From Octopus sinensis (Eukaryota): a stretch of 64,000 bases of DNA. Location: assembly GCF_006345805.1 (NCBI RefSeq), contig NC_043004.1, forward strand, positions 17,422,001 to 17,486,000, given 5' to 3'. A program made the position numbers and the translations under genes. Shown here one piece after another: positions 2,796 to 64,000 of this stretch; position 1 is the stretch's first letter, and each line of letters starts with the position of its first letter. Under the pieces are notes generated by a model. That model was not told the origin of the DNA and did not search any database. It worked only from the letters and a program-made list of their open reading frames with translations.

Positions 2796-2804
2796 TGAGT
2801 AACA

Positions 2805-2945
<141 letters not shown>

Positions 2946-2949
2946 CATC

Positions 2950-13827: not shown

Positions 13828-14375
13828 GTTCGTGCTGATTTATAGTAGCTTACATTTCGACTTATTTTAGAACATGGTTGATCCATAAAATAGGATTTAA
13901 CTGCAACTCCATTTAGAGCACAGTTTAAGCTATCTTTTCGTGGAAGAAGGTTTATGTTCCTATAACCTGTGTTAATTCTGTAACCCTTTAAAATGGAAGA
14001 TAAGAAAGTTCATTTTCGGCACTTGATGCTTTGGGAACCAGACAAAAATTGCTGCAGCTCGGCTGGGATGTGTTACTCCACCCGTCATATTCACCAGATA
14101 TTCCTTCAGATTTCCACTTATTCAGGTTTCTGCAGAATAGTCTTAATGGTAAACATTTCAATTCCTTGGATAACGTAAAAAGACACCTTGATGAATTCTT
14201 TGCCATGAAACCACGTCAATTCTGGGAAGAGGGTATTTTCAAGTTAAAGGAAAGATGGAGACGCATTGTGCAACAAAATGGTTCATATTTTGTTGATTAA
14301 AAATTTAATGGCAAGTATTTATTGACTTTTTCCTTACCTTTAAAAATCGGCATGAACTTTCCGGACAACCCAATA
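13828..14375 (+). mobile_element. Internally deleted mariner element
   Basis: N-terminal MEDKKVHFRHLMLWE joined directly to C-terminal RQKLLQLGWDVLLHPSYSPDI.PSDFHLF..KLKERWRRIVQQNGSYF. Right TIR AATCGGCATGAACTTTCCGGACAACCCAA|TA; partial left TIR GTTCGTGCTGATTT. Confidence 0.85.
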
Positions 14376-36864: not shown

Positions 36865-38432
36865 ATATATATATATATTATATATATGTGTATATAGGTG
36901 CAGTCTTGGCTGTGTGTTAAGAAGCTGGCTTCCAAACCGCATGGTTTCGGGCTCAGTCCCACTGCGTGACACCTTGGGCGAGTGTCTTTTACTATATCCT
37001 CGGGCCGACCAAAGCCTTGTGAGTGGATTTATATGTGTGTGTGTCTCTGTGTTTGTGTTTGCCCCTCACCACTGCTTAACAACCGGTGGTGATGTGTTTA
37101 CGTCCCCGTAAAAAAGTCCTAGGGTTGATTTGCTCGATTAAAGCCCTTCAAGGTGGTGCCCCAGCATCGTTGCAGTCAAATGACTGAAACAAGTAAAGAG
37201 TAAAAGATAAAAGTTATGTACACACACACACACATATGTATGTATATATGTACGCATGTATGTATACACGCACACGCACACACACATATATATATATACA
37301 TTATAAAAAAAGATGAATGGATTATCTAGTATTATTGCTACAATTGCTTCAGTAGGAGTCTTTATTGTAGTATAAACATAATACAGTTAGATGCGTAACA
37401 TGTTACATAATCAACAGATCATCAATAAACAAAATTTCAAATAAGAAATATAAAGATTTAAGAAATTTAATGTAGGGTGTGTCTCCAACCTGTCGATTTA
37501 GACGGGTAGATAGTGGAATAAGGTCGTAAATATAAGGGTAGGTAAATGCATTTATATCCTAATGAAGTAACTAAGAGTAGCGACCTCATCAGCAAAGGCC
37601 AATAGTAGCAGGATTTACTAGAATACACCAAGCAATAGGTGCCAAGCATGACATTTGACCATGTCAAAATGTTCGAAGTCATCTGCCAACGCAGCTCTGA
37701 GAGTCATTTATTGTACTATAATACTTTAAAGTCAGCGTTAGTTGTTTTTACTAACTTAATTAATCATGATAAGAGCGTTCCAAAAGAATATTACCGAACT
37801 AAGATAATATTAGCATAATTTAACGAAGATCGAGCTACTTATAAGACGGGGGAATAATTTAAGGTAGAACCGCTGATTAGCTACGTTTTTATAAGAAATT
37901 CTAGGGGAGAGGGAGGGAAAAGAAAGACGGAGAAGAAAAGAAGAAAATGTAATAAAACAAAAGAAAAATCAAGTAGAGAGAAAAAATTAGAGGGAAAGTG
38001 GTCCACGTGCTGACAGGAAGATGGCATTAGCATAAACAATTAAAGAAATGAGCATTCTAGAATAATGAAATTTGTACAAGTAATAAACAGTATTAACATA
38101 AAGATAAAAATGTATAAATTTATGAATTTACGTGGTTTGAAAAATGAAATATGTAGATATCAGTTAATTAGCTGTAAAGAATCAGTTGAAAGACTAAAGT
38201 GTGTTTGAGAAATAAAAGCAGAACAGTTACACGCGAGAAATAAGTCGAAAGACGTTAACCCAACTTTTATATCAACAAAGCATTTAATTTAAATGACTAT
38301 TTACTATAAATTTAAGTCTAAATAATAAGTAATTAAATCAAATAAATATATATTATGTTGAAATCAATTTATATTACTATAATAAATATATATTTAAAAA
38401 CAATATAATTATTTATTTATTAGCTAAATCTA

Positions 38433-39159
38433 TTATAAAGGTACTTTAATTTGTTTACATTTAATTTTACGTTTCTCCAATGAGTTTACCAACGCATAAT
38501 TGTTATTAAATAATATTTCTTTAAATTCGTTATTAAAAAGAGAACAATTATCACTCCCTATAGTATATGATTTAGCCCTACAAATAATATCCCAATTTAT
38601 TTATATTTAATAGATCTTGATTTAAGGTCCCAAATATATTTACTGAGACCTGTTGAATTTATAAGATTTTTATTCCTAAAAGATTACATATGTTGAGAAA
38701 TTCTAGATTTAATTTTATTCATAGTGGACCCTATATAAATAGTATTTAAATTAAGATAATTCAAATTCTTATCATCTATTATAGTTACCATACACTTATA
38801 GACTACATTATCTAAATTACAATAATTATTAAATTTAAATCCAGACTTATCTCTACATGTACAATAAATTAACTCTTGGTCTTTATTATTATTATTGGAA
38901 TCATTATTTAATCTATCTTTATAGAATTTCTTTAATTTAAAAATATTACATGAATAAATAATATTACCAACATTATTAGTAGTTGAATAACCAACTCCAA
39001 AATTATCTTTAGAAAAAATATAATATTTTTTTATTATCCCTAATAAATACTTCAATTATATTTAAAAATCTCTTTAATAAGATTTGTTTTAACCTGAGCC
39101 CCAAAAGGAATGATTAACCATATTTTATTTTTATTTTTATCTTTTATATTATGATTATA

Positions 39160-39235
<76 letters not shown>

Positions 39236-39680
39236 CTATCATTATTATTACTATCATTATTATTATTATTATTATTATTGTTATTATTACTATCATTATT
39301 ATTACTATAATTATTTGTAATATTATTAAATTTATTATCTTCATTAATTGAAAAAAATTTTATCTTATTTTTATTATGATTACTATTCTTTTTATTTTTT
39401 TTATTCTAATATTAAATTTATGATTTACATCATCAAAATTCCTATTATTCTTAAGACGATAAATACCTAAATAAAATTTATCATAATAAAAATCATTAAA
39501 ACTATTATCTTTTAAATTATAACTATGTTAACAAATATTAAAGAATTTAATATTATTATTGTATCCTGCCTCATTCAGGGCTTTATTATAATAAGGTGCA
39601 TGTTTATTAAAAGTCTCAAAATCATAAGAAAGTAATAATTTAAGCATTGTTTTTAGTTTTCCCTTAATGCATATTTAGTA
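38433..39680 (-). mobile_element. Penelope-like element relic (end of RT thumb, linker, GIY-YIG endonuclease)
   Basis: Translations FNKHAPYYNKALNEAGY; VKTNL; YSTTNNVGNII; CTCRDK..YCNLDNVVYKC..IYIGSTMNKIKSRISQH; SFRN..STGLSKYIWDLK..WDII..C match the PLE thumb, CxC-C-H and GIY-YIG layout. Contains stops and frameshifts; the RT core is missing. Confidence 0.85.
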
Positions 39681-39692
39681 TCTTATATATAT

Positions 39693-39739
<47 letters not shown>

Positions 39740-39964
39740 TAAAACTAATGTAGGATAAATTTTTTTTTTCGGGAAAATTTTTTTATCAATGGCCAGCATA
39801 TCAAAAAACACCTTCAAATGTTAAATTTATTAATAATTTACAAGATAAGGGCAAAAGAAAAATTCAAATGCCAAATTTGCCGAAAGAAAGACAAAAATTG
39901 TCAATCACCATTATAATTTATGCGTCTCGAAACAAACCGATAGAAATTTCTAAAAAATTCGTTA

Positions 39965-40023
39965 TTACCGTATTGGTCCAATTTCGGGGTTAATTCATAG
40001 AATTTTCCCCTCTTCAGCGGCAA
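39965..40023 (-). ncRNA. Type I hammerhead ribozyme, mirror copy of 40068-40125
   Basis: Reverse-complement copy in the left arm of the palindrome, with a GGGG/CCCC stem II. Same sense as the PLE ORF. Confidence 0.85.
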
Positions 40024-40067
40024 ATACTTGAGATATAAGTGAAATACTTACTCATACCCATGGGTAT

Positions 40068-40125
40068 TTGCCGCTGAAGAGGGGAAAATTCTATGAATTA
40101 ACCCGAAATTGGACCAATACGGTAA
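40068..40125 (+). ncRNA. Type I hammerhead ribozyme (PLE-associated)
   Basis: Stem I TTGCCG/CGGTAA, core CTGAAGA, stem II GGG..AATTC-TAT-GAATT..CCC, GAAA, near-palindromic stem III ATTGGACCAAT, cleavage triplet AUA after 40119. Confidence 0.85.
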
Positions 40126-40354
40126 TAACGAATTTTTTAGAAATTTCTATCGGTTTGTTTCGAGACGCATAAATTATAATGGTGATTGACAATTTTTGTA
40201 TTTCTTTCGGCATATTTGGCATTTGAATTTTTCTTTTGCCCTTATGTTGTAAATTATATATATATATATTTTTTTTTTAAGAATATATTTATATTTTAAA
40301 AGACTTTTTACGTATATTTATTAATTAATTATTTTATTATTCTAGTTTATCTTT

Positions 40355-40457
40355 AACCTGATGAGTGACTATATTTATATCGAAGTGATTTTACTACTAC
40401 TATTAATTTTTTTACTATAATCATTTCTTAAATATATCCACGAAACACGTGTCTTTA
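40355..40457 (+). ncRNA. Hammerhead-like motif with extended stem II
   Basis: CTGATGA at 40358; stem II GTG..TATATTTA..GAAGTGATT / AATCATTTC..TAAATATA..CAC; GAAA at 40442; palindromic stem III ACACGTGT; GUC triplet at 40451-40453. Stem I is weak (3 bp plus a mismatch). Confidence 0.65.
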
Positions 40458-40636
40458 TTCTACCAAATATATACGTTTTTATTATTATTTTGCAATTTAC
40501 TTAATAATCGGTATATTATTGTTATTTTATTTGAAATATTTCTATTATATGTAATTTTCTAGATCGTGTAATTTAATTGTTCATTTTGACTTGGTAAAAG
40601 GTGTTTTTTTCTAATTTATATATATATATATATATA

Positions 40637-40815
40637 CTGTTGTGTCTGGTTACAGTCATTTTCTTTTTGTGCCTTATAATTTAACACACGTACCGGCAAA
40701 ATTTTCCACTTATCCACTTATTTCTTATATTTATAAGAAATAAGTAGAAAGTTTACCGGTGAGTGAGTTAAATTATAAGGCACAAAAAGAAAATGACTCT
40801 CCCCAGACACAACAG
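40637..40815. repeat. Fold-back hairpin, ~85-bp arms
   Basis: CTGTTGTGTCTGG..CATTTTCTTTTTGTGCCTTATAATTTAAC mirrored by GTTAAATTATAAGGCACAAAAAGAAAATG..CCAGACACAACAG; centre CTTATA-TT-TATAAG. Confidence 0.9.
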
Positions 40816-41040
40816 ATTATGCTTCAACACACGAACTCACATAAAGAATCTTGCAAACCAAATCTATAAACGATACACACACACACACACACACACACAT
40901 ACAATAATATGAGGGAGTAATTCATTTTTTGTACTTTTTGTGATCTAGTTATATGTTTTATAATATATTTATTTTTTTCTTTATGATTTGGTTTATGTCT
41001 ATCATTGCTTAAATTACATAATATTGATTTTTCTCTAATT

Positions 41041-41092
<52 letters not shown>

Positions 41093-41766
41093 ATCATACA
41101 TATATATAATATAATATATATATAATATATATATAGTGTGTGTCTGTGTTGTGCGTGTGTGTGCGTGTGTGTCTATGTATGTATATATGTATATATATAT
41201 GTAGGTCCTGGGTTGAGTCGGGGTTAACCACAGTAAATAAGGTACTCAATACATAGCAGAGTAAAGTAATTTATTTTATAGCTTCCTGAAGATTTCATCT
41301 GAATGAAACAGTTCTAGTCCTGTAGAAACTCCTTCTATAAAATAAAAAATATATGTATATATATATATAGAGAGAGAGATTCTTCATATTGAATTAGTAC
41401 CTTACTCTTGTAAGTATTTAAAAAAATACGAAAATGTTACAAGTATAAGGTGTGTTATGAGCATTTATAGAACATGTATCCTATGTAAACTCAACAAACG
41501 ATTAAAGAGGGAGAAAAGAAGATAAAAGTTTTATAAAATTTTAATCCATGCATACATCGCTTTGAATGGTAACACCAATATGTAAGAAACATAGAAAAAA
41601 TTAAATTAATTATATAATATATATAGTTGAAATTTAAAGAAAAAGAAAAAACACGGGTATATGAAGAACAACCATGTGTATTAGTTTGGGAAACATGAAA
41701 AAGTCTTTTACGTTTCTAGCCTACGCTTTTTAACGGAATGGAATAGAGAAGACACAGACACACATG

Positions 41767-41825
<59 letters not shown>

Positions 41826-42089
41826 TGTATGTATGCATGCATGTGTGTGATTTCGCCTCATAGGTAATTTTTCAATATATTTCAGGTGGTCTGAATAGTC
41901 TTAATTATTTCTGTTTTCATCAATTATCCTTCTACATATTTAACAGACACCATTAAACTTTTGACGAATTCGTTTTGATTACTACTTCTATTTCTTAATT
42001 TTTATGCTCCCACCTACGCCTTTCCTCACGTCAACAGATATGTAGATAATTTTAACTATATATTTCTTACATACCCTGCTATAACGCTA

Positions 42090-42128
<39 letters not shown>

Positions 42129-42540
42129 ACACACATACGAACACACATAAACACACAGACACTCACACACACGCACATAGATACACACATGCACGCGCAC
42201 ACACACATACGCACACACACAAATAGAATAAAAAAAACTGAAAATGGACTGAGAGACATTTAGTAATTTACGGTAAAATATTGTAAACAGCTGTTTTTAT
42301 TTATTAATTTTCTGTATACACATTAGCAATCTGCTAGATCATCCAGGTGGGGGCGCAATGGCCCAGTGGCTAGAGCGGCGGACTCGCGTTGGAGGATCAC
42401 GGTTTCATATGCCTTAGAAACCGGGAAACCGGGCCCATGAACCTGGCTAGGCTTGAAAAGGGCGCATAAAAATTTAAAAAATGAATCACCATTTATATAT
42501 ATACTCTGATAGGCGAGCTAGCACGGAATGAACTGAACGA

Positions 42541-42591
42541 GCTGACCTTACTGAAGATGGCTACCGAAATAGCCGAAACTGGCGGGTCAGC
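42541..42591 (+). ncRNA. Hammerhead-like motif in the left arm of the giant palindrome
   Basis: CTGAAGA-T-GGCTA(CCGAAA)TAGCC-GAAAC-TGGCGG-GTC. Extra U after A9; stem I is imperfect. Confidence 0.55.
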
Positions 42592-42857
42592 TATATATAT
42601 ACTTTATTTAAAGCAGCAGAAAATTCAACAAAACCCGTTACAAAACAGGTTTTGTTGAATTTTCTGCTGCTTTAAATAAAGCATATTACTCTACCACTGG
42701 TATTTGAATACTCTTTTTTCCACCTTGTTTCACATTTATGTGTTTACTCCGTGGTAGAGTAATATGCTTTATTTAAAGCAGCAGAAAATTCAACAAAACC
42801 TGTTTTGTAACGGGTTTTGTTGAATTTTCTGCTGCTTTAAATAAAGTATATATATAT

Positions 42858-42910
42858 AGCCTGACCCGCCAGTTTCGGCTATTTCGGTAGCCATCTTCAG
42901 TAAGGTCAGC
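42858..42910 (-). ncRNA. Hammerhead-like motif, mirror of 42541-42591
   Basis: Reverse-complement copy in the right arm, with one extra G after GTCAG. Confidence 0.55.
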
Positions 42911-43323
42911 TCGTTCAGTTCATTCCGTGCTAGCTCGCCTATCAGAGTATATATATAAATGGTGATTCATTTTTTAAATTTTTATGCGCCCTTTTCAAGC
43001 CTAGCCAGGTTCATGGGCCCGGTTTCCCGGTTTCTAAGGCATATGAAACCGTGATCCTCCAACCGCGAGTCCGCCGCTCTAGCCACTGGGCCATTGCGCC
43101 CCCACCTGGATGATCTAGCAGATTGCTAATGTGTATACAGAAAATTAATAAATAAAAACAGCTGTTTACAATATTTTACCGTAAATTACTAAATGTCTCT
43201 CAGTCCATTTTCAGTTTTTTTTATTCTATTTGTGTGTGTGCGTATGTGTGTGTGCGCGTGCATGTGTGTATCTATGTGCGTGTGTGTGAGTGTCTGTGTG
43301 TTTATGTGTGTTCGTATGTGTGT

Positions 43324-43356
<33 letters not shown>

Positions 43357-43872
43357 TAGCGTTATAGCAGGGTATGTAAGAAATATATAGTTAAAATTAT
43401 CTACATATCTGTTGACGTGAGGAAAGGCGTAGGTGGGAGCATAAAAATTAAGAAATAGAAGTAGTAATCAAAACGAATTCGTCAAAAGTTTAATGGTGTC
43501 TGTTAAATATGTAGAAGGATAATTGATGAAAACAGAAATAATTAAGACTATTCAGACCACCTGAAATATATTGAAAATTTAGATACATATAAAATTTAGA
43601 TACAGTTGAATATGGTACTGAGGTTAAAGGTACCAGAATTTAGTATGGTATTATCCATATAATTTAAAATGGGGTGATTACAATCAAAATAAGCAACAAG
43701 AATATCCAGAGGTAATGCCGTACGATCGTTTCATGCGCATCCATTTAATTGAACAATGCAAATATTACATCAATTTGTTACAAATTGATGTAATATTTGT
43801 ATTGTTCAATTAAATGGAGTCGCATGAAACGATCGTACTGCATTACCTCTGGATATCCTTGTTGCTTATTTT

Positions 43873-46399: not shown

Positions 46400-47745
46400 C
46401 TGGAAACCACATCATACATACATACATGCACATATACATACATGCACATATACATACATGCACACATACATAGGAAAATAATTTGGCCACAAGAAACGTT
46501 CATATTTGGTTGTTGATCGTGGAAAATCAGTGTCCCAGACCCAATACTGACCATCCTGTCCCGTACAAAGAATGCTACAAGTAACTAGGCATTGATGAAA
46601 ATATATCACACGATGGTACAGTGAATAAAAATCGAGTGACTCGAGACTTCTATGCCAGACTTGGAAAAATATGGCAGACGTAACTCTCCTCTTACAAGAA
46701 GACAATATCCCATAATGCATTTGCAGTACCAGTGCCGATCCCAGCATTTGGCAAACTTAGCTGTTGTTCAGAGTAAATCCACTCTATAGATTTTAAAACC
46801 CGCAAGATACTGACATCAACAGGAAATCTTCACAGAAATAGTGATATCGACAAACTAAGAATAAATGAAGGAGGTATAACAGTGAGATCAGTGCAGACAG
46901 CCTTCGCAGACATCACTTGTTAAATAACAGCGACAAAAATAAATATATAAACTTAGTGCTGAAAAGCGAGGAGGACAGCAGTGAGCTGCACAGGAAGCAC
47001 TCTCTTCCTGATGACCTCCCATACAGCCCCCTCCCCCAAATAACATACCTCAGAGAAGGCCTGGATGTGAAACAGTCAGCATATATAAAAAAAAGAAACA
47101 AGAAAAGAATAACAGGACCATGCATGGATATGCTTGAAGACTTGGAAGAAGACAGTGATATCAACATGAAGCGAAACCTCTCTTGAATCGTGACCGCTAC
47201 GTCACATCACGCTTGCGATCCAAAAACAGCAGATTGCTACGAAATACCTTATGAACAAAAGGGACAGTGAAGTCCTTGGAGCTCCAAGATGCAAACGCAA
47301 AATTTAGAAAATGTCATGTTTTTTGTGGAAGATACTACACATGTGATTAGTAGCTGTCCAAATATGTAATCAAGGTACTATCGCCCTATGCGATACACCG
47401 TTGTCGCAGAAACAATATAAAATGCCATCCTGATAAAAGAGTGTCCTGGAATAAATATAAAAAAATTCCCGTCATTGACTACATGCACAAATATCAACAC
47501 GAGGAATACTGATGGAACATTCTCACCAAAACATTTATTAAGTGTAAACATAACGGACCGGATATTGTTGTTTGGAACTGAGAAAAATAGTATGTGTGGT
47601 CATAGAGGTCAGCTGTCCTGTTGACTTGAATATCTCTTTGAAAATCAAAGAGAAAGAAGATATTATGGGCATCTACTTCGCAACTCACTGCTTCTATATC
47701 GAGGTGATAAATTTATATACATTTGTACCAATAATCCTTTCTATT
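46400..47745 (+). mobile_element. Lineage E copy, decayed
   Basis: Similar to the reverse complement of 16880-18505; includes KHNGPDIVVW, IEVSCPVDLNISLKIKEKED and FVPIILSIG. Confidence 0.8.
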
Positions 47746-50081
47746 GGAAGTACAAGGCCCCAAAATTTGTGGGGAGGGATTAAGTCGTTTACATCGACTC
47801 CGGTGCATAACTGGTACTTATTTAATCGACACCGAAAGGATGAAAGGCAAAGTCGACTACTGCGGAATTTGAACTCAGAACATAGCAACGGACGAAATGT
47901 TGTTGTTTGTTCCTTCTCGAGCCATGCCTGGCTCACAAGGGCCGGTCCCCGGTTTCATGCTGTTAGATGCAGGAGAAAAGAGTGAAAATTGTCGCGAAAG
48001 AGTCAGCAGAAGTTCGCCATTACCTTCTGCCCCAGCCTCGCGGAGCTTAGGTGTTTCGCTCATAAACACACACATAGCCTGATCTGAGATTCGAACCGCG
48101 ATCCCTCAACCGCGAGTCTGCTGCTCTAACCACTAGGCCATGTGCTTCCACAAACAGACGAAATACCTATTTCTTTACTACCCACAAGGGGCTAAACACT
48201 GAGAGGACAAACAAGGACAGACAAACGAATTTAGTCGATTATATCGACCCCAGTGCGTAAATGGTACTTATTTAATCGACCCCGAAAGGATGAAAGGCAA
48301 ACTCGACCTCGGTCGGAATTTGAACTCAGAACGTAATGGCATACGAAATACTTATTTCTTTACTACCCACAAGGGGCTAAACACAGAGGAGATAAACAAG
48401 GACAGACGGACAGATTAGGTTAATTATATCGACCCCAGTGCGGTAGATGGTCGCATAGAGGCATAACAGTAAGACCGGCTTACTTCATCAGGAAGAAAAC
48501 TTGGCAAATAGTTATGGAACGGAATTCAGAACCACACATTTTAGAAGAACATCTATTTTTCATGCGGTAGTAATTTTAAACAGAATTGTTATAAGATTCT
48601 CGCTTTGAAACTGTAAAACTGTAAATTTAGAAAATGTTTATTGATTAGAATGAAATTATGCAACGAGTTTGTCTCAATTTCGCATGACATACTAAATTCC
48701 TGATTTTAGGCTATAAATCAATCACGTTGAATAACCTATATTCTAACCTTTAACTTAGACAAACAAAAGTAAATGAGTTGTTAGATCCTTAAGCACCAGT
48801 TATAGTATCAAAAACTAAGATCTCATTAAACAAGCGACATAAATCTCATTAATCAAATCCTAGCTTAGATTCTTTAAAAAAGCCACTTCCTACTTCATCT
48901 AATTCCATTAATATACCAAGAAAGTGCAAAATAATTACGCAATAAGAAAAACCATATTCACCCTTACAATTCCCCTCAGCAAGACAGAAGTCATCATACA
49001 TCTATCAAAAGCCACAATTACACTATCACGTATTTCCGTTCCAGACAATAAGTCCGCCATATTAGCAACTAAATCATAAGTATCATCTCATTTTCCATCA
49101 AGAAATAAAAATTCACACCTTCCCAACCTACGCTAATTTGCTTACCATTTTCACACTATCACCCTCACAAAATCACACACATTACCCGATTTCCGTGAAG
49201 AAATCCTATTCTCTCTCTCTCTTATAACATCAAAACCTACGCACAATTTTTTTCATATGCAAACGATTGAACTGTCCATCCATATATTCCAATACCTCAC
49301 TGTCAGCTGAGTAATTCTCGGAAATGTCAGTCGCGAACACCAGGTTAGAAATATTTCACCTATTTCTTGCCAAGTCGTTTGTATCTATTTTGCCATATGT
49401 ACATGTGTGTGTGTGTGTCTCAGTGTGGTTCCGTCTAGTAATGGCCGTGAATACAAGGGAGGTAGCTGTTCTTTTACAAAATGAAACAGTACAAATAAGT
49501 TGAATTTGAAATTAAGGAATACGTCATGCACAGAAACACAGAAATCACATATTTAATTTGATTTAGCTTTTTATCGTTTTTTATCCTTTTGTTTTTATTT
49601 TTATACACAAACTCACATACGCATACACGCCTATTCACACGCATCTGATTTTCGTCTTACGTCTTACTTTACGTCACTACAACATTCAAGTGACAGTTGC
49701 CCTCTCTTGATATTCGGGTTTCTTAACAAATGAAAGAGCGGCATTTTTATACAACATTCTAATAACAACAACAGGAAGAGGCCAAGGAAAAATAATTATA
49801 GACAAAAGAATTAACTTGTTTCATTCTACATAAAACCAGGTGAATATCGAACGAAGATAGTTCTCGCCTGAACATCGAAATGGCGTGAAATCTGAGGCAA
49901 GAAAGAAAAATTACACTTAATATAGGTAGATATGATATAATATGTATTGAATACTTTCTTCGACATTCGTTGCTATAAATTGGTTTATAATCATGAGAGG
50001 CATTTTTCCAGCCCACACAGCCTCGCATACACGCGCGCACTCGCACCTCAAATGTTAAAAACAAATCATTATGTATTTCTT

Positions 50082-55157: not shown

Positions 55158-55440
55158 ATTTTCATCACCGCTATCGTTATCATCATCATCGTCGTCGTCG
55201 GCATCATCATGATCATCACTACCATCATATATTAATATCACAAACCGCTTACTTTTACGAAAATAACTTGACGTTTTGAAATTAAAAAAAAAAAATCTAT
55301 ACGGATATAAATATATATATATATATCAAATATACCTCTATCTCAAGTTAAAATACAACAGAAAGATCAACAAAACAAAATTGATATCTATTATTAATTA
55401 AAAAAATAAACAATTTCAAAAAGTAACGACCGTTTGGAAC

Positions 55441-55543
55441 ATGGAAAATGTCAGTGAAATATCGTCTGCTAACAGCAGTAACATGGAGTACGTATGGACA
55501 GCTCGTGAAAGTTACGTTGTTGGTGGTTACTTTATTATAACAG
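55441..55543 (+). CDS. First coding exon of an opsin-like class A GPCR (peropsin/group-4 opsin-like)
   Basis: ATG in AACATGG context with an upstream in-frame TAA at 55399. Encodes MENVSEISSANSSNMEYVWTARESYVVGGYFIIT plus 1 nt of Gly, then a consensus donor CAG|GTAAGT. Two N-glycosylation sequons (NVS, NSS) and a TM1-like start. The Y-x4-G| phase-1 junction matches my recollection of exon 1 in peropsin (VATYLIMAG) and Opn5 (FYLTIIG). No exon 2 was recognisable in the window. Confidence 0.65.
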
Positions 55544-56364
55544 GTAAGTGTAGTTCTTGTTTTAAACGAATGAAGAATACCTTTCTTCTTATTCGCTTAG
55601 TTAGCTGTCCTGCTTTCTAATCAACTGGAAAATTTCTTTGTACGTTACTCTGCAATTATGTGTGTGATATGCGCACACAGCAATGCGTACGTGTGTTTGC
55701 CTGCTTACAAAATAAACCGTTGATGCTTACGTGCTTACATACGTGTGCGCGTGTGTTGGAGGTCGTGTAAAAGTGCGTGCTTATGTACGTGTGTGTGTGT
55801 GTGTGTGTATACGCGCGTGTGTGTTTATGTGTCGGTGTGTGCATGTGTGTGAATTTATGCGTATATGTTTATGTACGAATGAATGCATGTGACTATGGTT
55901 GCGTGTGTGCCAGAGTTTTGTTATTCGGTTTATATTAGTTAGTTTGTATTTCTTCATATCTCTTGCTAAACGTAAGCAAATGTGCACGCCGCTTGTGTGC
56001 GTGTGCGTGCAATCGAAAACGTGTGTGCGTATTAGTGTATATGAATACGTGTATGTATATATATATATACACACACACATTCATACATACTTCTATACCA
56101 GTACGTATCTAAAAAAAGAAATAGATTCAGACGTGTGCGCGCACAAACTCACGCCCGCACACAAACGCGTGGGTATGTGTGTGTGTGTGTGTGGTGTGTG
56201 TGTATATATATTATATATATATATATCTATATATTATATATATATATATATATACATACATATATTATATATATATGTTACAGAGTAAGCGCATAAATTG
56301 TGAAACAAGGTGGAGAAAGGTGGTGCTCCAGCATGGCCACATCAATGACTGAAACAAAAAGAAT

Positions 56365-56398
<34 letters not shown>

Positions 56399-56706
56399 CC
56401 GCGTACACACACATATATGCATGCATACGTACATTTCTACTCTCACTCACACATATAACATGTGCGTTTATGTGTACACTGTATCTGCATCACAGGTGGC
56501 AAGAGTGTGTATGTGTGCTTACACATACGCATATATATATGTGTGGTGTATCTGAGACAGTGCGTGCGTGTGTGGTGTGAGTGTGTATGTCTGTGCGCGT
56601 ATATATATATCACACACACATATGTTTTTTGTCTACACCACCTGTCTTCGTCTTTTGTTTTTTTTTCGTGAATTCTCCGTATACACACACACACACACAT
56701 ACCTAT

Positions 56707-56769
<63 letters not shown>

Positions 56770-56884
56770 TTATTATTATTATTACAGCTGCAGACATTAC
56801 AGAGTGATTCAAGGAACGAGAGTTTGGTGTTTCTGCACTTATCAAATGAACACAAACGTACGCACACATGCTCTCTCTCTCTCT

Positions 56885-56948
<64 letters not shown>

Positions 56949-57095
56949 TGTATATGTATCTTTTAGTCCGTGAAGTATTGTTTTCAATTATGCATGTGTA
57001 TATAACTGCATACAGATAGTAACGGGCACGTTAAAGTGCAAATGTGAAGGCACATACAGTAAAGCGTGGATGAAATTGTATGCAAACGCTTCGAA

Positions 57096-57460
57096 GCACT
57101 CCGTCGGTTACGACGACGAGGGTTCCGGTTGATCCGAATCAACGGAACAGCCTGCTCGTGAAATTAACGTGTAAGTGGCTGGGCACTCCACAGACACGTG
57201 TACCCTTTACGTAGTTCTCGGGGATATTCAGCGTGACACAGAAAGTGACAAGGCCGGCCCTTTGAAATACAGGTACAACAGAAACATGAAGAAAGAGTGA
57301 GAGAAAGTTGTGGTGAAAGAGTACAGCAGAGATCACCACCATCCGCTGCCGGAGGCGCGTGGAGCTTTTTAGGTGTTTTCGCTCAATAAACACTCACAAC
57401 ACCCGGTCTGGGAATCGAAACCGCGATCCTATGACCGCGAGTCCGCTGCCCTAACCACTG
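57096..57460 (-). mobile_element. SINE family B copy
   Basis: Reverse complement of the family B pattern. Confidence 0.9.
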
Positions 57461-57791
57461 CGTGCATATGTATACATTGTAGAAAGGCCTGCATGATGTA
57501 TGTTTGCATGCAAGTGTATATATATATACATATATATAAATGTTCCTTACCGAGCTATGCCTGGCTCATAAGGGCCGGTTTCCCGGTTTCAGTGGCGTAG
57601 AAATTCCCCACCTGGACGGGACGCCAGTCCATCGCTGCATTACTCATTTTTGCTAGTTGAGTGGACTGGAGCAACGTGGAATGAAGTGTTTTGCATCACT
57701 CGGTCCAGGAATCGAAACCACAACCATACGATCATGTGTTCAACACCCTAACCACTAAGCCACGCGCCTCCATATATAAATATATATATAT

Positions 57792-58190
57792 AGGCGCAGG
57801 AGTGGCTGTGTGGTAAGTAGCTTGCTAACCAACCACATAGTTCCGGGTTCAGTCCCACTGCGTGGCATCTTGGGCAAGTGTCTTCTGCTATAGCCCCGGG
57901 CCGACCAATGCCTTCTGAGTGGATTTGGTAGACGGAAACTGAAGAAGCCCGTCGTATATATGTATATATATGTGTGTGTGTGTATGTGTCTGTGTGTCTG
58001 TGTTTGTCCCCCTAGCATTGCTTGACAACCGATGCTGGTGTGTTTACGTCCCCGTCACTTAGCGGTTCGGCAAAAAGAGATCGATAGAATAAGTACTAGG
58101 CTTACAAAGAATAAGTCCCGGCGTCGATTTGCTCGACTAAAGGCGGTGCTCCAGCATGGCCGCAGTCAAATGACTGAAACAAGTAAAGAG
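57792..58190 (+). mobile_element. SINE family A copy, within the putative opsin intron
   Basis: Full head GGCGCAGGAGTGGCTGTGTGG through tail ..GAAACAAGTAAAGAG. Confidence 0.9.
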
Positions 58191-58819
58191 TATATACACG
58201 AACTTCCTGGGATGAGAAAGAATATTGTTATTGGGAAAGTGAATGTGAAAGTAGAGTTAAGAGTTAAACGAATGTAACGATGTGTCTACCTGCTGTGTAC
58301 GTATGTGCTCTTTAAGCATGATGTGTGTGTGTTTACATCTTTAATTATTAGTGTTTGATGTGCACATGTCCATATATGTATTTGTATGTGTACACACGCA
58401 CACACACCACACACACACACACACACACATATACACATATACATACACACGCACAAACACAGACACACAGACACACTAGTACACATTCTTACATACGTTT
58501 GCATCAAAGCAAAGTGTTGTCGTAAATAAGTGCAGTGTGTGTGTGTGTTCACGTGTATGTGTTTTGGTCCTCTATGTTTGCCTATGTGTGTGCACAAATA
58601 TGCGTGTATATATATGTGTGTCATATATACATATATACGTTCTCGCGTTGTTGTGTTTTTTTGTGTGCTTTCAAGTTTGGATTAACTTTATATATGTATG
58701 TATGTATCTATCTATCTATCTATCTATCTGCCCGTCTGTCTGTCTTCTGTCTCTATCTATCTATCTATCTGTCTGTATGTCTGTCTGTCTGTCTGTCACT
58801 CTGTCTCTATCTATCTATC

Positions 58820-58959
<140 letters not shown>

Positions 58960-59194
58960 GTGGTTTGAGTTACTTTGTTATTGTGTTTATGATCGAATGC
59001 ATGTATCTAATTATATGTGTTTATTTACATATGAAACAATACTATCAAGTGAATAATTCACGTATATATAACTGCGATTGATAAGCCTGCGTATATATAT
59101 ATTTCTTTAGTACATCCGTCACATGCCTTTCTATATTTGACATCCATCATTTTGTAAACATGTGCATTTCTGTGTTGAATATTTATCTGTTTTT

Positions 59195-59790
59195 TAGGCG
59201 GCGAACTGGCAGAATTTTAGCACGCCGGGCGAAATACTTGGCGGTTCAAATTCCGCCGAGATCGACTTTGCCTTTCATCCTTTTGGGGTCGATAAATTAA
59301 GTACCAGTTACGCACTGGGGTCGATATAATTGACTTAATCCGTTTGTCTGTCCTTGTTCGTCCTCTCTGTGTTTAGCCCCTTGTGGGTAGTAAAGAAATA
59401 GGTATTTCATCTGCCGCTACGTTCTGAGTCCAAATTCCGCCGAGGTCGATTTTGCCTTCCATCCTTTCGTGGTCGATAAATTAAGTACCAGTTACGCACT
59501 GGGGTCAATGCAATCGACTTAATACCTTTGTCTGTCCTTGTTTGTCTCCTCTATGTTTAGCCCCTTGTGGGCAATAAAGAAATAAGACACGTTAGCACGC
59601 CAGGCGAAATGGTTATCGGTATTTCGCTTGTTTTTATGTTCTAGGTTCAAATTCCGCCGAGGTTGACTTTGCCTTTCATCTTTCCGGGGTCGGTAAATTA
59701 AGTACCAGTTCGCGTACTGGGGTCGATCTAATTGACTGGTCGCCTCCCCCAAAATTTCGGGTCTTGTGCCTAGAGTAGAAAAGAACGTAT
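59195..59790 (+). mobile_element. SINE family C, head plus tandem ~190-bp body repeats
   Basis: GGCGGCGAACTGGCAGAA.. head and three GCCTTTCATCCTTT.GGGGTCGATAAATTAAGTACCAG bodies. Related copies at about 9760-10005(-), 10335-10530(+), 21835-22050(-), 25565-25797(-), 47745-48440(-), 54905-55080. Confidence 0.85.
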
Positions 59791-59825
59791 ATCTGTTTCT
59801 AACTAAGTCTGTATGTTGGTAAACA

Positions 59826-59975
59826 TACGAGGGGTTCTGGTTTTAAGGTGACGCGAAAGACCTGGATGGAGGCCCAAACCTCCGAGTTTTTTTTTTTACA
59901 GGGCTTAGAAAAACTAAAGGACCACCGCAATAACCGTGTGAACCTGAGAGGGGAATATGCTGAATAAAATCAAAA
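59826..59975 (+). mobile_element. Short mariner-derived fragment
   Basis: TACGAGGG-type start followed by FFLQGLEKLKDH..VNLRGEYAE*, resembling a mariner C-terminus. Confidence 0.5.
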
Positions 59976-60581
59976 TCAACTGAATAAGTACGAACATAAG
60001 AACAGGGGGAGATTTGTTTGACTAAAAACTTCAGCCCGGTGCTCCAGCATGGCTACAATCCAACAAAACAAACAAGTAAAAGACAAAAGATGATATACAT
60101 CTACTTCGAACTTGCAATGTATATCTCGCTGTAAACATGTTTTTATATTACATATGTACACCGGCGAGTCAACAAACGTGTTTTAATTTTATGTGCGTAT
60201 ATGTTTAGAAACAAACGTGTGTACTTTTAATGTACACAAATGTGTGTTTGTGTTTTGTCTATTTAAAAAAAAATGTGTTTGTATTTTGTATATAAACCCC
60301 GAAAAACAAAAGCAGATACTGTATTTCTATTTTGTTATTCTGTTCGTATATCTATTCATGAAATAGTGTTTAAATTTTGATAGGATATTTATTTGTTTAT
60401 AAGTCTGAATGTTGAATGCATATCTAATGGTAAACATAAGTATTTCTATGTTGAACACACATACACAAACAAAATATACAAACACACATACATACACATA
60501 CACAAACACACACATATATCGGCCTGGTGTACCAGCACAACCTCAGCCCTGGGCTGAAACCAGTAAAAGATGATATATATA

Positions 60582-60614
<33 letters not shown>

Positions 60615-60626
60615 ATAATAATAATA

Positions 60627-60680
<54 letters not shown>

Positions 60681-60793
60681 GTGACAACAAAAGAATGAGA
60701 CCTCGATATTAGGTAAGTAGGGGATTATCTATATATGTATAGTTTAAGACAGTCAGTTGTCATAACAGTACTCGGAGTTTCAAATTATCGTCT

Positions 60794-60827
<34 letters not shown>

Positions 60828-60836
60828 GTAATAATT

Positions 60837-61172
60837 GTGAAGGTGCATGGCTAAGTGGTTAGAGCGTCAAGCTTACGATCGTGAGGTTGTGAGTTCGATT
60901 CCCGGACCGGGCTGCGTCTTGTGTTCTTGAGCAAAACACTTTATTTCACGTTGCTCCAGTACACTCAACTGTAGAAATGAGTTGCGATATCACTGGTGCC
61001 AAACGCATTGGCCTTTGCCATTCAATTGGATAACACTGGTGGCATGGAGAGGGGAGGCCGGTATGCATAGGCGACTGCTGGTCTTCCATGAAAACAACCT
61101 TGCCCGGACTTGTGCCTCAGAGGGTAACTTTGTAGGTGCAATCCCATGGTCATTCATGACCGAAGGGGATCT
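60837..61172 (+). mobile_element. SINE with a B2-type head and an unrelated tail
   Basis: GTGAAGGTGCATGGCTAAGTGGTTAGAGCG..GAGTTCGATTCCC..CTTGAGCAAAACACTTTATTTCAC, then a different 3' half ending CATTCATGACCGAAGGGG. Confidence 0.8.
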
Positions 61173-61364
61173 CCCCCTCCTCCTCTTCCTCCTCCAATTA
61201 ATGCATATACATGCATGTGTGCGTGTTTATGTGTATATGTATGTATGTATGGTTCTTGACTGATGACTGAGGGCTTCGAATGTCCCGTCCTGTGGTTCTT
61301 GTGTCGTCTCTGTGGTGTTTCGTGTTCTTGTCCATGTCTGTAATTATTTTTACTGTTTACCTAT

Positions 61365-61419
<55 letters not shown>

Positions 61420-61554
61420 TATATATGTAAACATTAATGTTATATATAAATTGAAGTATAAGAACGTTGAGGTATGCCCTCAAAGTTCTGGCGTTCTCTG
61501 TCTGCTCTGCACTGTAAATTTTTGTTTATAGATTCTTGATAAATACACAGCAAT

Positions 61555-61573
61555 GAGTGTATATATATATATA

Positions 61574-61632
<59 letters not shown>

Positions 61633-61822
61633 TATATATAGATATATATATATATATATATGTACACATATATATGCACATACATATACGTATATATGTG
61701 TAAGTATATATATATATATGTATACACATATATATGCACATACATATATGTATATATATGTAAGTATATATATATATATGTATACACATATATATGCACA
61801 TACATATATGTATATATATATG

Positions 61823-61853
<31 letters not shown>

Positions 61854-62317
61854 TATATATAATATATATATATATATATGTGTGTGTATAGATGTACATA
61901 TAAACTTCACTCAAGCATTTGTTTTTAATATTTTCGTCGCACCAACAGCGACCTGGTCGCTGATACGGCTCTAATGCACTTGTAGTGGAATCGTGTGAGT
62001 GATGTTAACCATTTTTGTGTGTTTTTTGAAATGCTAATATTTGTCTTCCCAACTGCAATCGTTTTAGTTTCAACACAATGTATCAAATGAAATCACTTGC
62101 CAAGCATATAATCTCCGATATATATAAACAAAAACATGATAATTTGGTACATTCTTGATATACTTTGCAAACATGCTTCAACAGGACGTTCAAGTAGTAT
62201 GTATGCATTTGTCTTTCAAAATAAACCATCTGCATACTTATGCTGAGTACTGGAATGTGTTGGTGTGTTTTATGCTTGAGAGAACAGCTAGAATTATTAC
62301 ACCCCCACACATGTATG

Positions 62318-62363
<46 letters not shown>

Positions 62364-62620
62364 ATATATATATATATATATAATATATATATGTATGTGT
62401 ATATATATGTGTATATATATATATATATATGTGTGTGTATATATATATATATATATGTGTATATAATATATATGTATGTATATATATATATGTATGTGTA
62501 TATATGTATGTATGTATATATAATATATGTATGTGTATATATATATATATGTATATATATATGATATATATATATGTATATATATATGTGTATATATATA
62601 TATGTATATATATATATATG

Positions 62621-62679
<59 letters not shown>

Positions 62680-62710
62680 TATATATATATATGTATGTAT
62701 ATATATGTAT
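61555..62710. repeat. Two long (TA)n-rich compound tracts (61555-61890, 62315-62710)
   Basis: Direct reading. 61660-61810 shows a ~60-bp higher-order period. Another long (TA)n tract at 36605-36895. Confidence 0.95.
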
Positions 62711-62711
62711 A

Positions 62712-64000
62712 CTTTGATACTTTGATAGGTTTCGGCCATTATTGGCCCAGGCCATGTCTAACTTAATAGCACCACCTGGTGAAATCTTTCAAGTCAGAAT
62801 TTGGGCACTATGGCCCACTCAAGTAGAGAGTTATTGTTTACAGAGACATATCCGGGTGTAGGGGGTTTATCCAGAATTTCTTGAAGGAATCTGTCCAAAG
62901 ACTTCTTGAACCCTATAGGGTCTGTTTCTGTTTTAATGTGTTTTGGTGTAATGTTAAAGAGAGCAGGGCCAATTGAGGTGAAATAATTGTTATGAGATGA
63001 GAGTGCGATTTTTGTTGTGGGTGGATGGCACGGGGCCCAAGCCTTGGATGTACCTAAAGGTGATGCCAACATCATTTGGGCAATGCTGATGGAATATTTT
63101 CCACTCATGCAGATGCATGATGTAGCGCTCACGGCGACGTTGGAGAGAATAAAGTTTTAGCTTTTCTAGTCGACCCCAATAGTCGAGGCCTGTCATGCCA
63201 TCTATCTTTCTTGTGATTGACCTTTGAGGTGCTTCAACTTTTATGCTATTTGTTTTTGTGTGGGGAGACCACAGTGGACAACAGTATTCAAGGTGGGGTC
63301 GGGCAAAAGTGGAGAAGAGAAGGATAATGGTGTGGATATCTCTCGACTGGAAAGTTCTGAGAATCCAGGAACACATTCTGCGGGCCATGTCAACTTTGGT
63401 GTTTATATGAGTGGCCCAGCTTATGTTGTTGTCCACAATTACTCCCAAGTCTCTGATGTTGTTGGATGCCACGAGTGTTTCACCTGAAAGAAGGGAGTAT
63501 GGGAGTTTCAGGGGATCCACTTTTCCAAAGTGGATTAACTCGAATTTATGCTCGTTCAGCAGCATATTGTTCTTTTCTGCCCATTGGATAACAGCCAGTA
63601 GATCTGACTGAAGGCATGTCCGGTCACTCGCCTCATTTACGACCTTCTGGAGCTTGGAATCATCTGCAAAGATTTTTATGTTGCTGTGCTTGATGATGTC
63701 ATTAATGTCATTAATGTAGATGATGAAAAGAAGTGGGCCCAGCACAGTGCCTTGCGGAACGCCACTACTGACTTTGGCTGGGCTTGATTTTACTCCTTCA
63801 ACTACAACATGTTGAGATCTGTCTGTCAGGAAATACTTGATCCATTTCAGTAACTTTCCAGAGACACCAATGTTGGATAGTTTTTTCAATAGGATCTTGT
63901 GATCAACCCTGTCGAAGGCCTTGCTGAAATCAAGGTAGATGACATCGGTGTTGGAGCCCTCTCCCAAAGCTCTCAAAATGTCATCAAAGTGATGCAGGAG
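62712..64000 (-). mobile_element. CR1/Jockey-group LINE, 3' part of RT ORF2, running off the window end
   Basis: ORF 62990-63976 has the RT motifs YLDFSKAFDRVDH, GVPQGTVLGPLLFIIYIND, FADD, DLGV and RPHLEYCCPLWSP. The C-terminus continues in ORF 62794-63132 after a frameshift near 63130. The 3' end carries an ATCAAAGT doublet next to a TA-rich tract. Confidence 0.92.

What the first reader, a model, noticed from the sequence alone, without database searches (positions are those of the whole stretch)
55441..55549. Tiny opsin-like first exon hidden among repeats and missed by the ORF track
Seen: a 35-codon exon with strong start context, two sequons, a TM1 start and a perfect donor. Recalled knowledge: peropsin and Opn5 genes have a phase-1 intron at the same Y-x4-G position. 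Inference: a non-visual or photoisomerase-type opsin, relevant to extraocular light sensing in cephalopods, with a first intron over 8.4 kb containing SINEs and an antisense LINE. Another class A GPCR cannot be excluded from 35 residues.
Basis: partly seen in the sequence, partly recalled or inferred. Interest (0 to 1): 0.7.

Follow-up and report, generated by a model that had tools for sequence, protein, structure and literature searches.

The report
First exon of octopus peropsin gene

Summary
An ATG at 55441 sits in a strong start context (A at -3, G at +4). It opens 34 codons plus one base, with two N-glycosylation sequons and a hydrophobic tail, and ends at CAG|GTAAGT (55544-55549).

The 34-residue peptide is identical to residues 1-34 of a 325-aa NCBI protein, "visual pigment-like receptor peropsin". 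The same protein is annotated in Octopus vulgaris (CAI9726855.1) and O. sinensis (XP_029640189.1). The O. bimaculoides orthologue keeps 30 of the 34 residues and both sequons.

The full protein has every opsin hallmark tested:
- a full-length 7tm_1 match;
- Lys280 aligned to bovine K296, and Glu168 to E181;
- the Cys97/Cys174 pair, DRY and NPxxY.

No other exon of the gene lies in the window, and the annotated gene spans about 357-359 kb. Intron 1 therefore exceeds 8.45 kb, and it holds SINE-like copies and an antisense LINE reverse transcriptase.

The phase-1 intron, 7 residues before the TM1 Asn, recurs in octopus retinochrome, a scorpion peropsin and a Xenopus Opn5-family gene.

A neighbour-joining tree and the literature place the protein in the mollusc peropsin-like clade. 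Published work already records that octopuses have a peropsin. Verdict: reader supported, gene already known, low interest.

The parts
55441..55543 (+). Coding exon 1 of the octopus peropsin gene: 103 nt, 34 codons plus the first base of codon 35, followed by a phase-1 intron.
   Evidence: 100% identical to residues 1-34 of P0001 (phmmer E 1e-12). tblastn of P0001 against the window gives residues 1-35 at 55441-55545, 100% identity, E 2e-16.
55441..55443 (+). Start codon in the context gaacaATGg (A at -3, G at +4).
   Evidence: Read. It is the first in-frame ATG after the stop at 55399-55401 and is Met1 of the annotated protein.
55447..55455 (+). N-glycosylation sequon 1 (N3-V4-S5) in the extracellular N-terminal tail.
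   Evidence: Conserved in the O. bimaculoides orthologue P0104. Glycosylation itself is inferred.
55471..55479 (+). N-glycosylation sequon 2 (N11-S12-S13).
   Evidence: Conserved in P0104. Glycosylation itself is inferred.
55510..55543 (+). Codons 24-34 (SYVVGGYFIIT), the extracellular-side start of transmembrane helix 1.
   Evidence: The HMMER alignment to bovine rhodopsin runs from residue 26 to bovine residue 39 with no gap through TM1. Asn42 of the GN motif follows in exon 2.
55544..55549 (+). Splice donor GTAAGT, preceded by CAG, a full match to the MAG|GTRAGT consensus.
   Evidence: Read. The annotated protein continues ...IITG|LIGVFGNG rather than the read-through ...ITGKCSS. The partial model P0003 starts exactly at residue 36.
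55544..64000 (+). The first 8,457 nt of intron 1, which runs off the window. It consists of microsatellites, SINE-like copies and a LINE fragment.
   Evidence: No other part of P0001 matches the window; all other tblastn hits have E>3 and contain stops. The annotated gene spans 359,187 bp in O. vulgaris and 356,961 bp in O. sinensis. Microsatellites are listed.
57236..59587 (.). Interspersed SINE-like repeat copies within intron 1: 57236-57368, 57773-57975, 58073-58187 and 59244-59587.
   Evidence: These copies are 74-97% identical to copies elsewhere in the window (D18, D19, D20, I6, I10-I13, I16, I20, I22). A 184-bp unit is repeated 1.8 times at 59247-59584.
62993..64000 (-). LINE reverse-transcriptase open frame, antisense to the opsin gene and cut off by the end of the window.
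   Evidence: Pfam RVT_1, E 4.2e-21. Open frame of 336 aa.

Best explanation
Window 55441-55543 (+) is the first coding exon of the peropsin gene of Octopus vulgaris or O. sinensis, which encode the identical protein.

The exon encodes Met1, an extracellular N-terminal tail with two N-glycosylation sequons, and the outer part of transmembrane helix 1. It ends in a phase-1 GTAAGT donor. The donor is spliced to exon 2 (LIGVFGNG...), which lies more than 8.45 kb downstream and outside the window, in a gene of about 357-359 kb with very long, repeat-filled introns.

Shown here:
- The complete 325-aa product is a class-A GPCR of the opsin family.
- It has the retinal-binding Lys (K280, aligned to bovine K296) and an E181-type counterion (E168), with Tyr at position 113.
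- It has the C110/C187 disulfide pair (C97/C174), DRY and NPxxY.

Inferred from spider, amphioxus and other peropsins:
- It binds retinal, probably the all-trans form, through a Schiff base, and light isomerises it to 11-cis.
- It therefore acts either as a photoisomerase that resupplies 11-cis-retinal, or as a bistable or dark-active G-protein-coupled light sensor. Because DRY and NPxxY are kept, the signalling role remains possible.
For: Identity of the exon:
- An HMMER search of 1.84 billion representatives with the 34-aa peptide found P0001 (325 aa), 100% identical over residues 1-34, E 1e-12.
- P0001 is NCBI CAI9726855.1 (O. vulgaris) and XP_029640189.1 (O. sinensis), both named "visual pigment-like receptor peropsin".
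- The O. bimaculoides orthologue XP_052825979.1 keeps the open frame, 30 of 34 residues and both sequons.

Splicing:
- The protein continues past the donor with LIGVFGNG, not with the read-through sequence.
- Only residues 1-35 map to the window.
- The gene ranges are 359 kb, 357 kb and 183 kb in the three species.

Opsin features:
- Pfam 7tm_1, E 2.9e-46, covering the whole profile.
- The best solved structures are rhodopsins at E 1e-43, against 1e-27 for the best non-opsin GPCR. The alignment puts K280 on K296, E168 on E181, Y100 on E113, and C97/C174 on C110/C187.

Family placement:
- The nearest named relatives are peropsins from Mercenaria (45%), spiders and Limulus (40-42%).
- In a neighbour-joining tree it joins Mercenaria peropsin (88.5% bootstrap) inside a peropsin-plus-retinochrome clade (79%), apart from the Opn5/8, Opn6, Opn3/TMT and pteropsin groups.
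- The same phase-1 intron, 7 residues before N1.50, is present in octopus retinochrome, scorpion peropsin and Xenopus opsin-5.

Literature:
- Peropsin transcripts were detected at low level in retina and optic lobe of several octopods (bioRxiv 10.64898/2026.07.15.738692).
- Peropsins bind all-trans-retinal and photoisomerise it to 11-cis (PMC5824942).
Against: - I could not see a transcript that joins this exon to exon 2. The support is gene models from three annotated genomes plus conservation. The published expression data are for other octopod species and do not resolve this exon.
- Older or partial models lack exon 1 (P0106, P0003 and the Argonauta model P0105).
- The Mercenaria peropsin model has its first intron 10 codons further upstream and in phase 2.
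- No verified vertebrate RRH or RGR sequence was retrieved, so orthology to vertebrate peropsin was not tested here. The literature says "peropsin" is probably not monophyletic.
- Chromophore binding, photochemistry and G-protein coupling are inferences.
Confidence: 0.95

Rival explanations
1. The open frame plus donor is a chance configuration in repeat-rich non-coding DNA. Gene predictors then attached it to a true opsin gene that really starts elsewhere.
For: - ATG, at least 30 open codons and then GTRAGT occurs 22 times in the window.
- My tools gave no direct transcript evidence.
- Several models of the same gene lack this exon (P0003, P0105, P0106).
- The word-index search with the read-through ORF found nothing.
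Against: - The exon keeps its open frame, 30 of 34 residues and both sequons in O. bimaculoides.
- Without it the protein would have no start, no N-terminal tail and only half of TM1.
- Intron position and phase match those of octopus retinochrome, scorpion peropsin and Xenopus opsin-5.
- It is the only one of the 22 candidates with the full feature combination, and 0 of 100 shuffles produced it.
- The island 55240-55650 belongs to no repeat family.
Confidence: 0.03
2. The exon belongs to an opsin of a different type (retinochrome, xenopsin or neuropsin/Opn5) that NCBI has mislabelled as peropsin.
For: - NCBI's automatic name "visual pigment-like receptor peropsin" is unreliable. Several bird and amphibian proteins with that name share exon sequences with Xenopus opsin-5.
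- The intron position is shared with Opn5 and retinochrome.
- No xenopsin and no verified vertebrate RRH was in my comparison set.
Against: - Octopus has a separate retinochrome gene (P0119), only about 25% identical to this protein.
- The tree separates the protein from the retinochrome, Opn5/8, Opn6 and Opn3 groups and joins it to Mercenaria peropsin at 88.5%.
- Its best matches are chelicerate peropsins, including Limulus Peropsin 1.
- Published phylogenies list xenopsin and peropsin as different octopus genes.
Confidence: 0.03
3. It is the first exon of a non-opsin class-A GPCR, the caveat the reader raised.
For: The 34 residues alone hit nothing in the PDB, and they lie upstream of the Pfam 7tm_1 match (residues 41-290).
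Against: - The full protein that starts with this peptide has the TM7 Lys in FAKSSxxYNP aligned to K296.
- It scores 1e-43 against rhodopsins, versus 1e-27 or worse against peptide receptors.
Confidence: 0.01

Closest known systems
Octopus peropsin: NCBI "visual pigment-like receptor peropsin", O. vulgaris CAI9726855.1, O. sinensis XP_029640189.1, O. bimaculoides XP_052825979.1
   Same: The window peptide is identical to residues 1-34, and the splice junction lies at residue 35. This is the same gene.
   Different: Nothing differs. The O. bimaculoides orthologue has 4 substitutions in the exon-1 peptide (N14D, M15L, R22G, I33L).
Chelicerate peropsins (Limulus Peropsin 1, Argiope, Centruroides) and Mercenaria peropsin
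   Same: - 40-45% identity across the whole protein.
- Same Y-x4-G...GNG layout of TM1.
- Same phase-1 intron in the scorpion gene.
- K296, E181, DRY and NPxxY are aligned across the family.
   Different: - The arthropod sequences form their own clade, which my tree puts beside the retinochromes.
- Mercenaria has its first intron elsewhere.
- The N-terminal tails do not align.
Cephalopod retinochrome (Todarodes REIS_TODPA; O. vulgaris retinochrome-like P0119)
   Same: - Same tetraopsin subgroup.
- Same phase-1 intron, 7 residues before the TM1 Asn.
- A presumed photoisomerase-type function.
   Different: - Only about 25% identity.
- Retinochrome is a separate gene in the same genome.
- In alignment A2 retinochrome lacks NPxxY, whereas the peropsin keeps it. 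The literature notes the same difference.
Vertebrate Opn5-family opsins (Xenopus laevis opsin-5 X1, P0024)
   Same: Exon 1 ends in ...Y-x4-G with a phase-1 GTAAGT donor at the homologous codon.
   Different: 30-34% identity, and a separate clade in the tree.
Vertebrate peropsin (RRH)
   Same: Shares the name. My remembered human sequence aligns at about 38% with the same motifs, but that sequence is unverified.
   Different: No verified RRH was retrieved, so orthology is untested here. Published trees do not recover peropsins as one clade.

Membership tests
Opsins (retinal-binding class-A GPCRs) | Seven-transmembrane rhodopsin-family domain. | tested here: met
   Pfam 7tm_1, E 2.9e-46, residues 41-290, covering profile positions 1-260 of 260. 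This was tested on the full annotated protein P0001. Only residues 1-35 are encoded in the window.
Opsins (retinal-binding class-A GPCRs) | Schiff-base lysine in TM7 (bovine K296). | tested here: met
   K280, in LFAKSSASYNPLIY, aligns to K296 in FFAKTSAVYNPVIY. It is invariant in alignment A2.
Opsins (retinal-binding class-A GPCRs) | Counterion glutamate (E181 or E113) and the C110-C187 disulfide pair. | tested here: met
   E168 aligns to E181, Y100 to position 113, and C97/C174 to C110/C187, read from the alignment.
Opsins (retinal-binding class-A GPCRs) | Closer to opsins than to other GPCRs. | tested here: met
   The PDB search gives rhodopsins and cone opsins at E 1e-43 to 1e-31, and the best non-opsin (galanin receptor) at 4e-27.
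Opsins (retinal-binding class-A GPCRs) | Actually binds retinal and responds to light. | not testable with these tools
   This needs expression with all-trans or 11-cis retinal followed by spectroscopy.
RGR/retinochrome/peropsin group; mollusc peropsin-like clade | Phylogenetic placement inside the group and with other mollusc peropsin-like sequences. | tested here: met
   Neighbour-joining tree, 39 sequences, 299 columns, 200 bootstraps: 88.5% with Mercenaria peropsin, and 79% with arthropod peropsins plus retinochromes. Limits: distance method only; no vertebrate RRH/RGR, Go-opsin or xenopsin included. It agrees with PMC10733189 and PMC5521729.
RGR/retinochrome/peropsin group; mollusc peropsin-like clade | Shared phase-1 intron in TM1, 7 codons before N1.50. 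| tested here: met
   - Octopus peropsin: G35 to N42, CAG|GTAAGT.
- Octopus retinochrome: G32 to N39.
- Centruroides peropsin: G40 to N47.
- Xenopus opsin-5: G41 to N48.
- Not shared by the Mercenaria peropsin model.
The feature is not exclusive to peropsins.
RGR/retinochrome/peropsin group; mollusc peropsin-like clade | Binds all-trans-retinal and photoisomerises it to 11-cis. | not testable with these tools
   Known for spider and amphioxus peropsins (PMC5824942). Not measured for any mollusc peropsin.
Vertebrate peropsin (RRH) orthologue | One-to-one orthology with RRH. | not tested
   No verified RRH sequence came back. The literature reports that peropsins are not monophyletic.
Retinochrome | Membership of the retinochrome clade. 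| tested here: not met
   About 25% identity to retinochromes, a separate clade in the tree, and a separate octopus retinochrome gene on another contig.
Neuropsin/Opn5 | Membership of the Opn5 clade. | tested here: not met
   30-36% identity. The Opn5/8 and Opn6 groups fall outside the 79% clade.

The most novel reading that the evidence does not exclude
The octopus peropsin keeps DRY, NPxxY and the E181 counterion, and squids and cuttlefish have lost it. It may be a signalling opsin, either a dark-active, light-inactivated receptor or a bistable one, used in non-image-forming or extraocular light sensing, rather than a simple photoisomerase. In that case this exon and its upstream region would be the handle for mapping where octopods deploy it. 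Nothing in the window tests this.
Probability: 0.2. Interest if true: 0.45.

Novelty: already known. Interest (0 to 1): 0.1.

Why it matters
The result confirms that a tool-less reading of raw sequence can pick a true 103-nt first exon out of microsatellite and SINE clutter and name its family correctly.

Biologically it adds nothing new. The gene is annotated in three Octopus genomes and discussed in published opsin surveys.

Two side results may be useful. First, the phase-1 TM1 intron is shared by octopus peropsin, octopus retinochrome, a scorpion peropsin and a vertebrate Opn5-family gene. Second, several partial gene models (an older one in O. bimaculoides and one in Argonauta) lack this exon, so opsin surveys built on them may carry N-terminally truncated peropsins.

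Tried and rejected
- **Word-index search.** The 59-aa read-through ORF found no candidate, although an exact match exists. A negative from that tool on a short query is not evidence of absence.
- **PDB search with the 35-aa peptide.** No hit at E up to 10. The N-terminal tail alone is uninformative.
- **Search for exon 2 in the window.** Stop-to-stop frames downstream are microsatellite or repeat translations, and tblastn finds only exon 1.
- **Fetching the gene's DNA.** I therefore could not see exon 2, measure intron 1, or compare exon and flank conservation between species.
- **Retrieving vertebrate RRH.** No RRH came back, so that sequence is unverified and is not used as evidence.
- **Gene look-ups.** Limulus, Stegodyphus, Panonychus and Centruroides isoform X3 were not on record. 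The Argiope gene was too long.
- **Supplementary files.** Those of two papers held no sequences. Albertin et al. 2015 is not held.
- **P0002.** This second hit is a repetitive 791-aa protein that matches only YxWTAR-like repeats. I dismissed it as a low-complexity or repeat coincidence.

Full report
**1. What is in the sequence**

The window is AT-rich (about 35% GC). It is full of microsatellites and interspersed repeats.

At 55441 there is an ATG in the context gaacaATGg, with A at -3 and G at +4. It is the first in-frame ATG after a stop at 55399-55401. The frame stays open for 34 codons plus one base and then meets aCAG|GTAAGT, with the donor at 55544-55549.

The peptide is MENVSEISSANSSNMEYVWTARESYVVGGYFIIT. 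It has two N-x-S/T sequons, NVS at residues 3-5 and NSS at 11-13, and a hydrophobic end. Read through the donor, the ORF is 59 aa. That explains why a 60-aa ORF track would not show it.

Two refinements apply. The exon is 103 nt, that is 34 codons plus 1 base. And the window supplies only the first base (G) of codon 35.

**2. Is it more than chance?**

The bare pattern is not. ATG, at least 30 open codons and then GTRAGT occurs 22 times on the two strands of this window, mostly inside microsatellites and SINEs.

Only the candidate at 55441 adds a purine at -3 and G at +4, at least two sequons, a hydrophobic tail and CAG before the donor. No shuffle out of 100 that preserved local composition produced that combination. 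That test is post hoc, so I do not lean on it. The island 55240-55650 belongs to none of the window's repeat families.

**3. Identification**

A word-index search with the read-through ORF found nothing, and the PDB gave nothing for the peptide alone.

A full HMMER scan of 1.84 billion representative proteins with the 34-aa peptide found P0001. It is 325 aa and 100% identical over residues 1-34, with E 1e-12. The only other hit, P0002, is a repetitive protein that matches a short YxWTAR-like motif, and I dismissed it.

P0001 is recorded as "visual pigment-like receptor peropsin". It is CAI9726855.1 in Octopus vulgaris and XP_029640189.1 in O. sinensis. Its 90% cluster also holds O. bimaculoides XP_052825979.1, a shorter Argonauta hians model and an old partial O. 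bimaculoides entry. The window therefore comes from O. vulgaris or O. sinensis. Their proteins are identical, so I cannot say which.

**4. The splice junction**

P0001 continues ...YFIITG|LIGVFGNGIVL..., whereas read-through would give ...ITGKCSS. The junction therefore falls at the GTAAGT donor, and only phase 1 gives a canonical GT.

A partial database model (P0003) begins exactly at residue 36. tblastn of P0001 against the window finds residues 1-35 at 55441-55545 (100%, E 2e-16). Nothing else is credible.

The annotated gene ranges are:

| Species | Gene range |
|---|---|
| O. vulgaris | 359,187 bp |
| O. sinensis | 356,961 bp |
| O. bimaculoides | 182,775 bp |

These are very long for a 325-codon product. 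Intron 1 is therefore longer than 8,457 nt. The part in the window holds microsatellites. It also holds SINE-like copies at 57236-57368, 57773-57975, 58073-58187 and 59244-59587. An antisense reverse-transcriptase frame lies at 62993-64000 (Pfam RVT_1, 4e-21).

**5. Conservation**

In O. bimaculoides the exon-1 peptide is MENVSEISSANSSDLEYVWTAGESYVVGGYFILT. That is 30 of 34 residues identical, with the frame open and both sequons kept. The whole protein is 97% identical. A faster-evolving N-terminal tail is normal for GPCRs.

**6. The protein is an opsin**

- Pfam 7tm_1 matches residues 41-290 over the whole profile (E 2.9e-46).
- The best solved structures are bovine and squid rhodopsins, jumping-spider Kumopsin1 and cone opsins (E 1e-43 to 1e-31). 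The best non-opsin GPCR reaches 4e-27.
- Reading the printed alignment to bovine rhodopsin gives the correspondences below.

| Octopus peropsin | Bovine rhodopsin |
|---|---|
| N42 | N55 |
| D70 | D83 |
| C97 | C110 |
| Y100 | E113 |
| D121-R-Y | E134-R-Y |
| E168 | E181 |
| C174 | C187 |
| K280 | K296 |
| N286-P-L-I-Y | NPVIY |
| N294-R-R | N310-K-Q |

**7. Which opsin**

The nearest named relatives are "peropsins" from the clam Mercenaria (45%), spiders (40-42%) and Limulus Peropsin 1 (40%). Vertebrate Opn3, Opn5-like and Opn6 sequences are 30-34% identical.

Octopus has a separate retinochrome gene (P0119) that is only about 25% identical.

I built a neighbour-joining tree of 39 sequences over 299 columns with 200 bootstraps:
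- The octopus protein joins Mercenaria peropsin (88.5%).
- Both sit in a clade with arthropod peropsins and molluscan retinochromes (79%).
- That clade is apart from the Opn5/8, Opn6, Opn3/TMT and pteropsin groups and from the two non-opsin outgroups.

This agrees with published work. McElroy et al. 2023 state that octopus species have one retinochrome and a peropsin that squids lack. [quoted passage not shown] Ramirez et al. 2016 place an O. bimaculoides sequence in a small protostome clade beside the retinochromes (PMC5521729).

Caveat: my tree has no verified vertebrate RRH or RGR, no xenopsin and no Go-opsin.

**8. The recalled intron**

I mapped annotated proteins onto their loci.

| Gene | Exon 1 ends | Position | Phase |
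|---|---|---|---|
| Octopus peropsin | ...GYFIIT-G, CAG|GTAAGT | G35, 7 residues before N42 | 1 |
| Xenopus laevis opsin-5 X1 | ...FYLLTL-G, CTGG|GTAAGT | G41, 7 residues before N48 | 1 |
| Centruroides peropsin | ...VYLLVI-G, ATAG|GTAAGA | G40, 7 residues before N47 | 1 |
| O. vulgaris retinochrome | ...LYLII-G, ATTG|GTAAGT | G32, 7 residues before N39 | 1 |
| Mercenaria peropsin model | codon L12 | 17 residues before N1.50 | 2 |

It also extends to retinochrome. It is not universal, as the Mercenaria model shows. Vertebrate RRH could not be tested.

**9. How it most likely works**

Shown: the exon supplies the start codon, an extracellular tail with two sequons, and the outer part of TM1. 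It splices in phase 1 to the rest of a complete opsin.

Inferred: the sequons are glycosylated, as in other opsins. The protein binds retinal at K280 with E168 as counterion. By analogy with spider and amphioxus peropsins, which bind all-trans-retinal and convert it to 11-cis in light (PMC5824942), it acts either as a photoisomerase or as a dark-active or bistable receptor. Because DRY and NPxxY are retained, G-protein signalling remains possible, as McElroy et al. also note.

On expression, a 2026 preprint reports low-level peropsin transcripts in retina and optic lobe of several octopods. I found no data for skin or suckers.

**10. What is not shown**

I saw no read or cDNA that joins this exon to exon 2. 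The evidence is gene models from three annotated genomes, conservation, and the intron-position homology. Several partial models lack the exon. I rate the chance-artefact rival at about 3%.

**11. Verdict**

The feature is the first coding exon of a gene that is already annotated and discussed in the literature. Its novelty is "already known" and its interest is low.

Noticed in passing
window 41865-43581: A large, nearly perfect palindrome. The arms at 42088-42590 and 42861-43364 are 99-100% complementary, with a 270-nt spacer, and the outer arm parts are 86% complementary. It could be a foldback element or an assembly artefact.
   Followed up: no
window 38000-42000; hairpin at 39822-39988 / 40102-40268: A very AT-rich stretch (GC 0.20-0.26) that contains a second inverted repeat, 96% complementary with a 113-nt spacer.
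   Followed up: no
window 11908-12309 (-) and 14004-14297 (+): Frames that look like mariner/Tc1-type transposase remnants (…HDNSRPH…, …SYSPDI…). Only a weak Pfam Transposase_1 match at 11952-12170, E 0.009 and below the cut-off.
   Followed up: partly
window 16873-18207 (-) and 46415-47982 (+): Two inverted, diverged copies (78% over 286 nt) of an element with long open frames (…IIEVSCP.D.N…VPIIIGALG…). Similar fragments lie at 2229-3319 (-). None has a Pfam match.
   Followed up: partly
window 62993-64000 (-): A LINE reverse-transcriptase frame (RVT_1, E 4e-21) that runs off the window end, antisense inside intron 1 of the opsin gene.
   Followed up: yes
proteins P0044, P0053, P0065, P0019, P0025 and others: Bird and amphibian proteins named "visual pigment-like receptor peropsin" or "OPSX" in NCBI share exon sequences with Xenopus opsin-5. 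They look like Opn5-family members, so the automatic name is unreliable.
   Followed up: partly
L001 2001-3111 (Mercenaria mercenaria peropsin locus): The clam peropsin model has its first intron in codon 12 in phase 2. That is 10 codons upstream of the position conserved in octopus peropsin, octopus retinochrome, scorpion peropsin and Xenopus opsin-5. It may be a moved intron or a doubtful first exon.
   Followed up: partly
(tool behaviour): The word-index protein search missed an exact 34-residue N-terminal match that the exhaustive HMMER search found. Negative results from the word-index tool on short queries should not be trusted.
   Followed up: yes
proteins P0105 (Argonauta hians), P0106 and P0003 (O. 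bimaculoides-type partial models): These database models of the same peropsin lack exon 1, and some lack further exons. Surveys that rely on them would carry truncated sequences.
   Followed up: partly
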